Made by a program: the position numbers and the translations under genes
Notes under the pieces: model-generated
The model's database searches: none
Seen by the model: the letters and a program-made list of their open reading frames with translations, nothing else
Told to the model about the DNA's origin: nothing
In this document: positions 31,736-52,004 of the stretch, one piece after another
How the letters are laid out: every line of letters starts with the position of its first letter
Position numbering within the stretch: the stretch's first letter is position 1
From: Ophelia neglecta
Lineage: Eukaryota
Length of the DNA: 64,000 bases
Direction: 5' to 3'
NCBI GenBank assembly: GCA_965285935.1
Contig: OZ260661.1
Location: 36,332,001-36,396,000, forward strand

Positions 31736-31832
31736 CTTTTGATAACTCCAATGCTCTTTTTTATCCAAGCTCTTTGCCCTAATTTGGTCCGTGATGCACA
31801 GGCCAAGCACTTACACTAACGTACACCTTCAT
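31736..31832 (-). pseudogene. Copy C: frameshifted paralogue of the signal-peptide exon of genes A/B
   Basis: ATGAAGGTG start (MKVYVSV), a frameshift, then VLGLCITDQIRAKSLDKKE in exact register with gene B FLSVAFTSQAVSKSVQKKE (T-x-Q-x-x-x-K-S-x-x-K-K-E shared). It ends at AAG|GTCGT, where B has AAG|GTAGGT. Confidence 0.65.
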
Positions 31833-32893
31833 GGTGAAAATCAGATAAACTTGCCAAATGGTGGTATAAAACGAATTACTTAAATTACGCTGCAACTGAA
31901 CCATTTAAAATTCAGCATCCTCCTGTTGAAAAGGATAAATCACTTTTCTGTCAACATTTCCATTCATAACAAGTTTGAGTACGGCCTCTTGCCAAAACCT
32001 TCATACAACAAATATATTTATGGTTATCACACTGAAGAAACCAACTGACTACATGTACCATTGTTTTATCAAACAACTAAACCTAAAAATTTATGTTTGT
32101 ATATTTATCATAACTTATTTTAAGTTTATAATTAATTAAAAATAAAATAACATGGTGTTTTACACGATGATAAAATGGGAGATTTAAGAAATGAATTCTA
32201 TTCCCAAGTATAAATTAACGTTACTATTTATGTGTTCACTTTTGATTGACTATAAAGCACAGGCTTCAGTTTCTACCGCTACTGTTTATCACCGGTGATA
32301 TGTGAAACCTGTGCTATAAAGAGTTTCATTGAGGAAATACAATCCGTTCTCATCAACAATTCCATGCGCCTTTAGAATTGTAGATGAGAACGGCCTTTCA
32401 ATCATATTTCTTCAGGCTTCGTAGCTAACCATAAATGTCTTTAACACTAACGTGTAATTTAATAGTATCATAAACTTCAAATTATAAGAGGAATGCACGC
32501 CATGTACCGCATTATACCACCCCAAAATGAAGAGCAATTTCTTCATTTTAAAAAGAAGAATAAACTTCATTTTGTCATTTGAAATAAACAACATTATTAT
32601 TTAGTCGTATTTTTTTCTCCAGAGGTCGCACAATTTTTTTAAACTTTCTGTAGAGGTAAAGTTGGAAACAAGCATACCTTTTGGTTTTTCTTTAATCTAA
32701 GGCGGTTAACAATTCAAAATACGTGTTTTTTCTTTAAAATGAGTGTGTTTGAAGCCACTTCAAATGTGAACCATTTCGTTTGATTAATGCTAATGTTTTT
32801 ACAAAGAAGCTTACAAAGTTTGTTGACGAATCAGTCTGTTAAAAACACTCACTACCTAGGTTGCGCCCTTAACAAGAACTTATTTTAGCATAG

Positions 32894-33180
32894 TCATGTA
32901 CCTGCTCTTTGTAAGAGGTAATAGGAATTTCGTCTCTTGCTTGTTTTAAAAAGGAATTACGTGCTCACATAACTTGTAGTTATATTGTGAATAATCTTTA
33001 TTTGTTTGGCGTTTTTCCCGCTATTCGTACTCATTGGGTGTCGTCCATCGTCATGTAGCATACAAGCATACAGTCATGCCATTAGCCATGTGCTAAGAAA
33101 ACTTATTTAACCCTATGGTTTTATCAATCATACTTATATTTGGTATACCAGCTAATGTTTATGTATGAATGTGTATCTAG
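32894..33180. repeat. ~285-bp direct repeat, copy 1 (probably an old LINE 3' region)
   Basis: tgctctttgtaagagg...catgtagcatacaagcatacagtcatgccattagccatgtgctaag...atgaatgtgtatc, also present at 35465-35747. Confidence 0.9.
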
Positions 33181-48400: not shown

Positions 48401-51400
48401 TAAATCAATAGGCCTAAGTTTACATAATACTTATGGCATAAAGTGCTGAAATTAATTGAGCATTCTCCAATTAAAGAATGAATCGGTTGAACATCTTTTA
48501 AATCCTTGAAATAATTATTAGTATTTATATCAAATGCACAAAATGACCAATCAACGAAGGAGGACATTTGAGTCCGGACCCGCCTTTCTCTCCGGGAGTA
48601 CCTCCTCAAGTGTGTGGGATGAGGGTCCCCTGTCAGGTTGGCGCAAGGTAGCCTACATGCCCCACTGTGGGAGGAGACACACACCCCACACCATCATCAC
48701 GATAAGGGAATCGCCCCTCCCACTAATTCCCAAACTTTAGAATCGGCATGGTTTGGCCCCTTTGCAAGGAGAACCCCCCCCCCCCCTCCAGTATGAAGCA
48801 GAATATGGGGGATACATACCGGCGAATTCCATGCGGATTCGAACGGGCAAGATCAAGGCATGCGCACACATTCCCTTCATCAGCGTACTTTGCACAGAGC
48901 CTAGAAAGGTCTCCAGCACTTGGCCGTGCAGTGCAATGAAGTTTTCGGGGGTGACATTGGTATCTGGAAGCATATAAATGTACCATCAGGATTATAGAGA
49001 GAAATTATAAGACAAATTCAATAATAAAATAGGGTCTGTCAAATTGTGACTGGTTTACATACTTCTATGTTCTAAAATGTGTTTAATCTACAGGTCTATA
49101 TTCTTTTGTGTCTATAGCCAAGTGTGATCCATTTGAAACTAGGCCTAGGCCTAGACAATTTCAAGAGCTGTCAAAATGAATTGAATCCATTAGATGTGCG
49201 CGTCTGTTTGGGCAAATATGTGTCGAAAATATAGTGTAACTTAAGTATGTTAAGCGAGATCTACTACTCTGGCAAATAAGCTGGTTGGCCGTATAGTCCT
49301 ACCTTCCAAAGCGGTTTCCAAGGCCGTCAGAGATGCCTTGTGGGTGTCAAGGTCGGCGCTAGCATCACTGGCTCCACCTCTGATAGTGTCCAGAATTCCC
49401 TGGAGTTCTGCTGTGCCAACTTTAAGAAAAAAACGGAGGAAATAAGATGCAGTTTGGATACCGACATGATTGGTTTAAATATCCTCATATTAAAGGGTTG
49501 ATAACAGCCTGAAGACTAGTCGATCTATACCAGTACCGCTTCTATAATAAGCAGCCGCGCCAGTTTGAAAAAAAATTGTAACTGTTATTTAAGCGACGTA
49601 AAATGACTTCTACTCTTATAAAAACCTTTCGTACCAGGAGGCATCACACCAGATTCCATGGAGGCCCAAACGGCAGGCAAGTCAATGCCACAGTGCTCCA
49701 AAATCAGGGCGTTATAGTCGAACCCGCCGGGCGTTGCGGCCGGCCCGTCGACGTGGTCGGAGTCAGACCACGGGCCGACAGATTCATCACTCTTTCCCTT
49801 GGACTTATCATTTTTTAAATTATCAAGCTGAAACGTAAACAATATGTTTGTGAGAACAAAACAACAAACAACAATATAACCATACAATGATGAATAATTT
49901 AGACAATAGTGGAATAATGTTATGTAATAATTAATGTAGTGCCCACCAGAAAACCTTAGGAAAATGCCCTCTTGATAGTTTGCTACCTAACTGTCCGAAT
50001 GACTTTTTTTTTTACATCCAATACTTGATTGACTTATGTTGTTGATCGAACACGAAATCTGTACCTTCTCCCTTATTTTTTTTATCTAAAGTTCAATAGT
50101 TTTGCAACGTACCAGAACTCTACGTCAAGCACCTAGGGGAGAATCGTATTATAGTTAGGTCTAGAACTTAACCGAAACTGTACATTCTCCCCTGCTTTTA
50201 AGCCAGCGTTTCAAGGGAATTGGGACGTACAATTACGCTACGTCAAAGATTTTCGCAACATTCGTATTAGTGAACTCAAGAAGTAAACATAAACTCTCTT
50301 CATTCTCCCTTTTTAATTTATCTATAGTTACCAGACATTGCCAAGACGGGCGGAACATCCATACTAGTAGCTCTAGAAATTAACATTAACTTTGTCTCCT
50401 TTATTGTTATCTAAATTTTTAAGAGTTACCTTAACTCAAGCAGGCTACAGCTTTCTTTAAAGTTTGTTAGCCAATATGAACTTCTGGTAACCTCGATCAC
50501 AATTTTATCGTTAGTTTCATCTATCAACATATTTCAGTTACAGAAAATAAATAGCATTTCTGGAAGTGATTTCCCAAAGTTCAACTATTTTTGAAAGGAA
50601 AGGGTGTGGTGGAATTTGTAATTGAATTGGCAGCATGTATTCCTTCTGGGTCAAAGGTTTTTATCATTGAACCGAGACATTGACACAGGAGAAACACCTT
50701 TATGCAAGACATATATTTGGTTAAGGACTTGAGTTACAATAAGGGTTTCCGCATGAGTGTAATAATTCGTGCTAAGAAACACGAGAAAGGAAATGATTGT
50801 GGTGTCTATTGTATGACTTGAATAGCTTCTCACGGTGTGTGCCGTTGGTCAATAGATGACAGAACATCCATTATTTATAGAAGTAAGGATTATACATTGG
50901 CCAGGTCAAAAATGGTAACAACCGGGAGGTCTAAACACAGTCCATTATTTCCACAGGGAAAGTTTCAGTTAGAAATGCCTTTTTATTACTTTCTCCTGGA
51001 ATCTGAAGGAAATTTTCATGTTAAAGTGAAAATTGTTTAAAAGCTGTTTGTCCTAATAGGAGGACCGTATGGGTAAGTATTAAGGCAAAGTATAGTAAAT
51101 GTCCTTTTGTGAACGAACCTCCCCCCCCCCGGTTGCCACGGTAACTGTAGTTGGCATGGTATTGATCCTGAGATTGAGACTACTGCACTCATTATTTTCA
51201 TTACCGCATTACATCGTTCTCACCGCCTACTAATGTGTCGCCCCCCCCCCCCCCCCCCCCCGCCTGCGTGTGCTGTCCTATCCCTCTAATTAGGGTCAAA
51301 ATTAAAGGGCTGCGAATGATTTTAATATAGGCCTAACTTAAACAAAAATAACGCAAACACGTATTTGATTCAGTTAGTCAGTGTCTATTTGAACTAATCA

Positions 51401-52004
51401 CATACATAAAGTTAATCAAACTGTCTCTTTAAATGTGAAACAATATATCGGATGCATTCTTCGTAATATGAGGCAAATTATAGATGAAAGGAAGAAATGC
51501 CATTTTCGTCAAGAGGTGAAGAGGAAAAACATGCCATTTTCGACACTTACACACCATGTTTAAATGAAGCTTATCTTGTATTTCCATGTACACAAGCACT
51601 TCGTGCTCTACTGAAATTCATTGGATAAGCAAATACTTGTGTAGACTTAACATACAGTACTTCTCCATAAATGGTGAATAGACCCATTATTTCTTTTGGA
51701 AGAATTCAACTTATTATAAAATATGGACACGAAAAAGTGCACATCAACTGGAAGTAATTTTTTTGCAATTTCTTAACTCCGCCATTTCGCAAAAGCTTTG
51801 AAGACAAATATATATATCAAAAATGAAATTTTCAAGTTTCCTTCACCAGCCGAACAGATGTATGCTTTTAATCCAAATCTAAATTAATAATTAGATAAAT
51901 ATGCTTACCAGTTTAGCGATCCTCTCAAGTTCTACCTTATTCATACTTCTGGCCCAGGTCTGGCCGGCAAGGGCCACGATCAGTAAAACGGCTAAGACTT
52001 TCAT
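45413..52004 (-). CDS. Gene A: uncharacterised secreted, predicted alpha-helical protein, 283 aa, 7 coding exons
   Basis: Exons 52004-51909, 49827-49635, 49419-49303, 48287-48225, 47034-46885, 46154-45999, 45489-45413. All introns GT-AG, phases 0,1,1,1,1,1, joining into one stop-free ORF: MKVLAVLLIVALAGQTWARSMNKVELERIAKL|LDNLKNDKSKG...GVMPP|VGTAELQGIL...ETALE|GVTGFRTAAKCNNAGTLVWKV|LEASKWDF...DNLKAA|DQLTGRAAL...NNVNK|ANDQKRATLLKDVTSLVKALKQLNI*. Hydrophobic signal peptide; TATA-like element near 52091-52098; AATAAA at 45338-45333. Confidence 0.85.
46273..46519. mobile_element. Harbinger/Tourist-like MITE in gene A intron 5
   Basis: TIRs gggagcgttcattatttatggccggggg / cccccggccataaataatgaacgctccc; TTA target duplication at 46270-46272 and 46520-46522. 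Confidence 0.88.

What the first reader, a model, noticed from the sequence alone, without database searches (positions are those of the whole stretch)
31736..52004. Tandem family of secreted proteins with shared termini and unrelated middle 'cargo' exons
Seen in sequence: three minus-strand first exons share MKV + hydrophobic core + Qxxx[KR]SxxKxE (A: GQTWARSMNKVE; B: SQAVSKSVQKKE; C: DQIRAKSLDKKE). In A and B this runs into a Leu-rich amphipathic helix split by a phase-0 intron (ELERIAKL|LDNL; ELLHILEK|IM). Both end, after a phase-1 intron, in a ~26-codon exon with a basic amphipathic helix (ATLLKDVTSLVKALKQLNI*; EFKILLEIMKKLAKKH*). The middles differ completely: about 225 aa of helical sequence in A, a 14-aa Gly/Ser/Glu repeat array in B. 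Established knowledge: conserved termini around a variable or repetitive core is how spidroins and some other secreted material proteins are organised. Inference: this may be an undescribed gland-secretion system (adhesive, mucus, biomineral matrix, egg coat or venom) in which the terminal helices act as sorting or assembly tags and cargo exons are exchanged.
Basis: partly seen in the sequence, partly recalled or inferred. Interest (0 to 1): 0.87.

Follow-up and report, generated by a model that had tools for sequence, protein, structure and literature searches.

The report
Two orphan secreted-protein genes plus pseudogene
The interval holds two intact neighbouring genes for small secreted proteins with no detectable relatives, and a decayed copy of one of them; the idea that they form one family with shared ends and swapped middles is not shown by the sequence.

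Summary
Genes A and B are real-looking, complete minus-strand genes. A has 6 exons and 257 aa; B has 3 exons and 250 aa.

"C" is not an intact first exon. Its ATG frame stops after 17 codons, and the Q...KS..K.E motif lies in another frame. C is a decayed tandem duplicate of B, supported by three colinear DNA matches (best E 2e-14) and a last-exon remnant.

The A-B kinship is unproven:
- Residues after the signal peptide: P~0.15.
- Last exons: P~0.16-0.18.
- No DNA similarity.
- Only the whole first exon is weakly suggestive (P~0.02).
- The two share gene architecture and a charge pattern of basic ends around an acidic middle.

B's middle is a 42-bp x 12 minisatellite with 95% identical units, and C lacks it. 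It therefore arose by expansion in place, not by exon exchange. A's middle is about 200 aa; two exons each fold as one helix of about 40 residues.

I found no Pfam, PDB, protein-library, metagenome or literature match, but these libraries cover this unidentified invertebrate-like host thinly. Function is inferred only. Interest is moderate to low.

The parts
51909..52004 (-). Gene A exon 1: start codon, signal peptide (predicted cleavage after residue 18), 14 mature residues; phase-0 donor GTAAGC
49650..49827 (-). Gene A exon 2 (phase 0 in, phase 1 out): acidic Gly/Pro-rich stretch, then a hydrophobic stretch. An alternative in-frame donor lies 15 nt downstream.
49303..49419 (-). Gene A exon 3 (phase 1-1). 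An alternative in-frame acceptor lies 9 nt downstream.
46885..47034 (-). Gene A exon 4 (phase 1-1); folds as one helix, residues 7-48, pLDDT 94
45999..46154 (-). Gene A exon 5 (phase 1-1); folds as one helix, residues 2-40, pLDDT 90
45413..45489 (-). Gene A last exon (77 nt with TAA): a KR pair followed by a 19-residue basic helix-like tail
45333..45338 (-). AATAAA poly(A) signal 74 nt after A's stop
36495..36602 (-). Gene B exon 1: start codon, signal peptide, Lys-rich motif and start of a helix; phase-0 donor GTAGGT
33775..34339 (-). Gene B exon 2 (phase 0 in, phase 1 out; 565 nt): 21-residue head plus the acidic Gly/Ser repeat (net charge -20). An alternative in-frame donor lies 15 nt downstream.
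33791..34297 (-). 42-bp x 12.1 tandem repeat inside B exon 2, 95% matches; open in all three minus-strand frames
33485..33564 (-). Gene B last exon (80 nt with TAG): basic amphipathic tail, net charge +5, hydrophobic moment 0.54
33348..33388 (-). B 3' untranslated block containing AATAAA, conserved with C (85% over 41 nt)
31745..31856 (-). C: remnant of a B-type first exon. ATG at 31832, stop after 17 codons, motif out of frame; 63% identical to B over 105 nt.
28760..28869 (-). C: block homologous to the 5' part of B's intron 2 (74% over 117 nt, E 2e-14)
28472..28596 (-). C: last-exon remnant (28596-28540; it has a 5-codon insertion, no stop at B's position and no good acceptor) and the conserved poly(A) block (28512-28472)
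39293..44611 (+). LINE-like retrotransposon between B and A (endonuclease and reverse-transcriptase ORFs) with ~950-bp direct repeats at its ends. It is not part of the genes but accounts for 5.3 kb of the 8.8-kb gap.

Best explanation
The interval is a small cluster of fast-evolving genes for secreted proteins in an unidentified animal-like genome. It is not a demonstrated swap-the-cargo family.

Gene A (257 aa) is sent to the secretory pathway by a cleavable signal peptide. It carries an acidic flexible linker followed by long helices encoded roughly one per phase-1 exon, which probably pack as an antiparallel helical bundle.

Gene B (250 aa) has a similar signal peptide, a polyanionic Gly/Ser/Glu/Asp repeat that is probably disordered, and a short basic amphipathic tail.

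B was duplicated in tandem about 4.8 kb downstream. That copy, C, has since decayed into a pseudogene. B's repeat grew or was homogenised afterwards by slippage or unequal exchange of a 42-bp unit, whose length keeps the reading frame.

A may be an older duplicate of the same ancestor, which I put at about even odds. If so, it diverged in place beyond recognition.

Shown: the gene models, the B-C paralogy, the young age of the repeat, and the helices of A's exons 4 and 5. Inferred: secretion, the bundle fold, disorder in B, and any extracellular matrix, coating or defence role.
For: - Gene models: all seven introns are GT-AG with pyrimidine-rich acceptors, the phases chain correctly, and the coding lengths (774 and 753 nt) are multiples of 3.
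- Composition: A's exons have GC 0.47-0.56 against flanks of 0.25-0.39. Purine at codon position 1 is 71%, and GC3 is 0.60 against 0.37 GC in the introns.
- Signal peptides: a crude signal-peptide filter passed nine ATG starts in 64 kb; A and B are the only clean MKV-type ones followed by a GT donor.
- Gene ends: a TATA-like TTTATAAG lies about 90 nt upstream of A's ATG, and AATAAA follows both stop codons.
- B-C paralogy: three colinear, same-strand DNA matches with equal spacing (E 0.003, 2e-14, 1e-6). B exon 1's best non-self hit in the window is C. The last-exon remnant has P 0.012, and the codon differences are mostly synonymous or conservative.
- Repeat age: B's units are 95% identical, while alignable B-C DNA is only 63-85% identical and C has no repeat.
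- Fold: A exons 4 and 5 each fold as one ~40-residue helix.
- Charge layout: +2 / -16 / +3 in A and +1 / -20 / +5 in B.
Against: - No transcript evidence was available.
- The full spliced proteins were neither searched nor folded, so the bundle fold and the disorder in B are untested.
- Variation among repeat units does not pick out a reading frame: 3 synonymous and 3 non-synonymous changes in two different frames. B exon 2 therefore rests on splice-phase logic alone.
- Several splice sites have in-frame alternatives 9-15 nt away.
- The protein libraries cover this host poorly. A conserved TRMT5 exon found only 3 hits, the best at 55% identity. 'No relatives' is therefore weak evidence of being an orphan.
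- The first-exon similarity (P~0.02) and the shared architecture leave room for a real A-B family.
Confidence: 0.6

Rival explanations
1. A, B and C are one family built on a conserved secretory cassette: a signal-peptide exon with a Lys-rich helix, and a last exon with a basic amphipathic helix. Between these, phase-compatible middle modules (phase 0 in, phase 1 out) are replaced or exchanged. The terminal helices would serve sorting or assembly of a gland secretion.
For: - Same strand and close neighbours, about 3.5 kb apart before the LINE insertion.
- Both start MKV with predicted cleavage at residue 18.
- Whole first exon P~0.023 with signal-peptide blocks kept.
- The motif occurs at all three first exons.
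- Same intron phases, first introns of 2081 and 2155 nt, last exons of 77 and 80 nt, total sizes of 257 and 250 aa.
- Both have basic ends around an acidic middle.
- B's tail is significantly amphipathic (P 0.024).
Against: - Residues after the signal peptide (P 0.15) and the last exons (P 0.16-0.18) are not above chance.
- There is no A-B or A-C DNA similarity under settings that do recover B-C.
- A's tail is not significantly amphipathic (P 0.12).
- The motif was defined after the fact.
- B's middle arose by repeat expansion in place.
- No other members occur in 64 kb.
Confidence: 0.25
2. Peptide-precursor reading. The acidic middle is a pro-region that masks a cationic amphipathic C-terminal peptide, which is released after secretion as an antimicrobial-like or signalling peptide.
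For: - A has a KR pair directly before its 19-residue C-terminal helix-like tail.
- The tails are basic (+3 and +5) and the middles strongly acidic (-16 and -20).
- B's tail has a hydrophobic moment of 0.54.
- The layout of signal peptide, anionic propiece and cationic peptide is common in antimicrobial-peptide precursors (my own knowledge). [quoted passage not shown]
Against: - B has no dibasic site before its tail.
- A's ~165 helical residues with strong codon bias look like a folded product rather than a throw-away propiece.
- No similarity to any known peptide family.
Confidence: 0.1
3. Partial artefact. B exon 2 is a non-coding minisatellite that merely happens to be open, and B, like C, is a dead or differently spliced gene. 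Only A would then be a working gene.
For: - The repeat is open in all three minus-strand frames and in one plus-strand frame.
- Variants do not favour any frame.
- Alternative acceptors and donors exist nearby.
- B's paralogue is already decayed.
Against: - B exon 1 (phase 0) and the conserved frame of the last exon (phase 1) can be joined only through a middle exon whose length leaves a remainder of 1 when divided by 3. The modelled 565 nt does so.
- The 42-nt unit preserves the reading frame.
- B's signal peptide, donor site, stop codon and poly(A) signal are all intact.
Confidence: 0.05

Closest known systems
SCPP genes of vertebrates (secretory calcium-binding phosphoproteins)
   Same: A tandem cluster of genes for acidic, largely disordered or repetitive secreted proteins. 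Kinship there rests on location, gene structure and the signal peptide, because the rest no longer aligns. [quoted passage not shown]
   Different: SCPP introns are mostly phase 0 (PMC9122587); here all but the first are phase 1. SxE sites are a hallmark there; B has none and A has two. There is no sequence relation, and the host is not a vertebrate as far as can be told.
Spidroins
   Same: Secreted, with a repetitive or variable core between non-repetitive ends.
   Different: Spidroin ends are folded domains of about 100-130 residues, conserved across paralogues (my own knowledge). Here the ends are 14-25 residues and not significantly alike. No Pfam family was hit.
[quoted passage not shown]
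   Same: Clustered genes whose signal-peptide exon is the recognisable part while the rest diverges fast.
   Different: In those families the pre-pro region is highly conserved and the mature part is short and often Cys-rich. Here the signal exons are only weakly alike, the products are about 250 aa, and A has 2 Cys while B has none.
Coding minisatellites in secreted proteins (for example the MUC7 subexonic repeats, PMC4997351)
   Same: An in-frame tandem repeat of near-identical units inside a single exon of a secreted protein. Such repeats are prone to copy-number change.
   Different: B's unit is Gly/Ser/Glu/Asp-rich and lacks Pro and Thr, so it is not a mucin-type repeat.

Membership tests
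Spidroins | Conserved folded N-terminal and C-terminal domains recognisable by profile | tested here: not met
   Pfam scan of all A and B exons found no family at E<=1, apart from one chance sub-threshold match. The terminal segments are 14-25 aa.
Spidroins | Termini conserved among paralogues | tested here: not met
   A vs B gives P 0.15 at the N-terminal side after the signal peptide and P 0.16-0.18 for the last exon.
SCPP-like cluster | Introns within the coding region mostly phase 0 (PMC9122587) | tested here: not met
   Only the first intron is phase 0 in A and in B; all the others are phase 1.
SCPP-like cluster | SxE phosphorylation motifs in an acidic secreted protein | tested here: inconclusive
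   A exon 2 has two SxE motifs and B has none.
Conserved pre-pro / hypervariable mature peptide families | Highly conserved signal or pro region among cluster members | tested here: not met
   A vs B first exons show no DNA match. The protein similarity is weak (P 0.023 with blocks kept).
   Met for B-C (E 2e-14, 1e-6, 0.003, colinear). Not met for A-B or A-C, except for the weak whole-first-exon signal.
   Phase 0 after a first exon of 32 or 36 codons, and phase 1 before a last exon of 77 or 80 nt. C keeps a GT at the matching place after its motif.
   None in the window. The rest of the genome was not available.
Helical-bundle secreted proteins (apolipophorin-III-like or similar) | Full-length fold is an up-and-down bundle of long amphipathic helices | not testable with these tools
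   Single exons fold as long helices. The joined model has no reference and was left out. There were no Pfam or PDB sequence matches.

The most novel reading that the evidence does not exclude
A, B and the decayed C are members of an undescribed, lineage-restricted family of secreted proteins. The family would be defined by a short basic N-terminal helix after the signal peptide and a basic amphipathic last exon. These enclose an acidic middle of free design, bounded by phase 0 on one side and phase 1 on the other. The oppositely charged ends and core would drive self-assembly or coacervation of a secreted material.
Probability: 0.2. Interest if true: 0.6.

Novelty: new member of a known kind. 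Interest (0 to 1): 0.3.

Why it matters
If the models hold, these are two unannotated, taxonomically restricted secreted proteins. One is a candidate long-helix bundle and the other a polyanionic repeat protein. The locus also shows three stages side by side: tandem duplication, decay of one copy, and growth of a repeat within an exon. That makes it a compact example of how secreted proteins become unrecognisable to their neighbours. It would matter more if expression in a particular gland or matrix were shown, or if more members were found. Neither can be settled from this window.

Tried and rejected
Searches that found nothing useful:
- Pfam on every exon: nothing.
- A exon 4 against 1.84 billion representative proteins: two hits only, both long coiled-coil or repeat proteins scoring through many weak stretches. 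I rejected both as composition artefacts.
- B exon 2 against 5.8 billion clusters: nothing.
- PDB sequence search with A exons 2-5: nothing below E 0.18.
- Metagenome scans with A exon 5 and with the core of the repeat unit: nothing.
- Peptide strings in the paper library: nothing.
- Rfam and tRNA scans: nothing.

Host identification:
- The TRMT5 exon (best hit 55% identity) and the LINE reverse transcriptase (best 37%, including an entry labelled 'invertebrate metagenome') did not name the host.

Other ideas rejected:
- A possible fourth first exon near 27.2 kb is a short chance ORF.
- Internal duplication among A's exons: not significant. The best pair, exons 4 and 6, gives P 0.006 before correction for 10 comparisons.
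- Homology between the heads of A exon 2 and B exon 2 (DGPAATPGG against EGPEKTFGG): P 0.14-0.38.
- Using repeat-unit variants to pick B's reading frame: uninformative.
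Full report
**What the window is**

The window has 34-43% GC, spliceosomal-type gene structure, a LINE-like retrotransposon and a TRMT5/TYW2-like gene. 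I could not name the host. The conserved TRMT5 exon found only three library proteins, the best at 55% identity. The LINE reverse transcriptase found nothing above 37% identity, and one of its hits is labelled 'invertebrate metagenome'. The protein libraries therefore cover this host and its relatives thinly. That limits what a blank search means. Nothing here looked human, and the N run at 6057-6258 was left alone.

**Gene A**

On the minus strand I could chain six exons: 52004-51909, 49827-49650, 49419-49303, 47034-46885, 46154-45999 and 45489-45413.

- All five introns are GT-AG with pyrimidine-rich acceptors.
- The first intron is phase 0 and the other four are phase 1.
- The coding length is 774 nt, giving 257 aa.
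- Exon GC is 0.47-0.56 against 0.25-0.39 in the 100 nt on either side.
- Purine at codon position 1 is 71%, and GC3 is 0.60 against 0.37 GC in the introns.
- A TATA-like TTTATAAG lies about 90 nt before the ATG, and AATAAA lies 74 nt after the stop.

Exon 1 is a textbook signal peptide with small residues at -3/-1 of position 18. Exon 2 opens with about 35 acidic, Gly/Pro-rich residues. Exons 4 and 5, folded singly, each give one helix of about 40 residues (pLDDT 94 and 90). The middle is about 200 aa, not 225, and not all of it is helical. In-frame alternative splice sites exist 15 nt from the exon 2 donor and 9 nt from the exon 3 acceptor.

**Gene B**

B has three exons: 36602-36495, 34339-33775 and 33564-33485. 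The intron phases are 0 and 1, and the coding length is 753 nt, giving 250 aa (the stop position comes).

Exon 2 holds a 42-bp x 12.1 tandem repeat at 33791-34297 with 95% matches. In the modelled frame it encodes a 14-residue Gly/Ser/Glu/Asp unit. The exon has a net charge of -20 and is 49% Gly+Ser.

The array is open in all three minus-strand frames. Its six distinct variants split 3 synonymous to 3 non-synonymous in two different frames, so variation does not pick the frame. The frame follows from splice logic instead. Exon 1 ends in phase 0, and the conserved frame of the last exon is entered in phase 1. A middle exon whose length leaves a remainder of 1 on division by 3 is therefore needed, and 565 nt fits. 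The 42-nt unit keeps the frame whatever the copy number.

**C**

The third 'first exon' is broken. From the ATG at 31832 the frame stops after 17 codons. The Q...KS..K.E motif (31789-31754) lies in another frame, just behind a TAA.

C is nevertheless a true copy of B. With relaxed scoring, B and C share three colinear, same-strand matches with the same spacing:

| B coordinates | C coordinates | Region | Identity | E-value |
|---|---|---|---|---|
| 36626-36523 | 31856-31755 | first exon plus 24 nt upstream | 63% | 0.003 |
| 33763-33648 | 28869-28760 | 5' part of B's intron 2 | 74% | 2e-14 |
| 33388-33348 | 28512-28472 | poly(A) signal block | 85% | 1e-6 |

Between the last two blocks lies a last-exon remnant at 28596-28540. 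It reads Q.E.KILL...I.KK. like B (P 0.012). Its codon differences are mostly synonymous or conservative. It carries a five-codon insertion, has no stop at B's position and has no credible acceptor. C has no trace of the 42-bp repeat. C is best read as a pseudogene from a tandem duplication with a period of about 4.8 kb.

**Is A kin to B?**

Against:
- tblastn with each exon of A finds no exon of B or C at E<20, and the reverse also holds.
- DNA comparison under the settings that recover B-C finds nothing for A-B.
- Residues after the signal peptide score P~0.15, and the last exons score P~0.16-0.18.
- A's tail is not significantly amphipathic (P 0.12), whereas B's is (P 0.024).

For:
- The whole first exon scores P~0.023 when the signal-peptide blocks are preserved in the shuffles.
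It was, however, defined from them.
- Of the nine ATG starts in 64 kb that passed a crude signal-peptide filter, A and B are the only clean MKV-type ones followed by a GT donor.
- The two share strand and intron phases, first-intron lengths (2081 and 2155 nt), last-exon lengths (77 and 80 nt) and total size.
- They share a charge layout: +2/-16/+3 in A and +1/-20/+5 in B.

I put common descent at about even odds. It is not shown.

**Mechanism of the differing middles**

B's repeat units are 95% alike, while alignable B-C DNA is only 63-85% identical and C lacks the repeat. The array therefore expanded or was homogenised after the duplication, in place, by slippage or unequal exchange. That is the ordinary behaviour of coding minisatellites in secreted proteins (compare MUC7, PMC4997351). 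It needs no exchange of cargo exons. The phase layout (0 in, 1 out) would allow such exchange, but nothing here shows that it happened.

**Searches for relatives**

- No Pfam family for any exon.
- No PDB sequence relative.
- A exon 4 against 1.84 billion representatives gave only two coiled-coil or repeat artefacts.
- B exon 2 gave nothing.
- Two metagenome scans gave nothing.
- No paper in the library holds the peptides.
This is the main gap on the side of fold and remote homology.

**Comparison with known systems**

The closest parallel in logic is the vertebrate SCPP cluster. There, acidic secreted paralogues are tied together by location, gene structure and the signal peptide alone (PMC9122587). 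However, intron phases and SxE content differ here. Spidroins do not fit, because their termini are folded, conserved domains. [quoted passage not shown]

**Verdict**

The interval contains two credible, complete genes for secreted proteins without detectable relatives, and a pseudogene copy of one. The third member is broken. The 'shared termini' are at best a weak signal. The 'exchanged cargo' idea is not supported. Function remains inferred: a secreted, acidic-core protein pair, one probably a long-helix bundle and one a disordered polyanion. Interest is moderate to low unless expression data or further members turn up.

Noticed in passing
window 39293-44611 (+): LINE-like element with an endonuclease ORF (40359-41150) and a reverse-transcriptase ORF (41155-43530). 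It is bracketed by ~950-bp direct repeats (39293-40240 and 43660-44611, 97-98% identical, spacing ~4370 nt), as if 1.2 copies of a 4.4-kb unit lie head to tail. The best library relatives are only 37% identical.
   Followed up: partly
window 22754-22848 and 24367-24499: Two arrays of a 16-bp tandem repeat that are reverse complements of each other (arms up to 95 nt, 91-92% complementary, ~1.5 kb apart). This looks like the inverted subterminal arrays of a foldback-type or MITE-like element.
   Followed up: partly
window 35456-35747 and 32884-33180: A 297-bp interspersed repeat, 88% identical between its two copies. One copy lies in B's first intron and the other just downstream of B. It is not part of the B-C duplication.
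   Followed up: no
window 60131-60610 and about 62300-62900 (+): Exons of a TRMT5/TYW2-like tRNA methyltransferase gene (Pfam TYW2_N_2, just under threshold; best library hit 55% identical). This is the only conserved gene seen in the window.
   Followed up: partly
window 33648-33763 vs 28760-28869: The best-conserved stretch between B and its decayed copy C is intronic (the 5' part of B's intron 2, 74% over 117 nt). It is better kept than either coding exon, and I have no explanation for that.
   Followed up: no
window 45413-45489 (-): A's last exon has a KR pair directly before the 19-residue C-terminal tail, which could be a processing site. B has no equivalent.
   Followed up: no
window 4730-4754, 12630-12663, 46367-46451, 54316-54344 and elsewhere: Frequent runs of 9-12 G or C, often inside short repeats, scattered through the intergenic and intronic DNA.
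   Followed up: no
window 6057-6258: A run of 202 N (a gap or masked stretch); left untouched.
   Followed up: no
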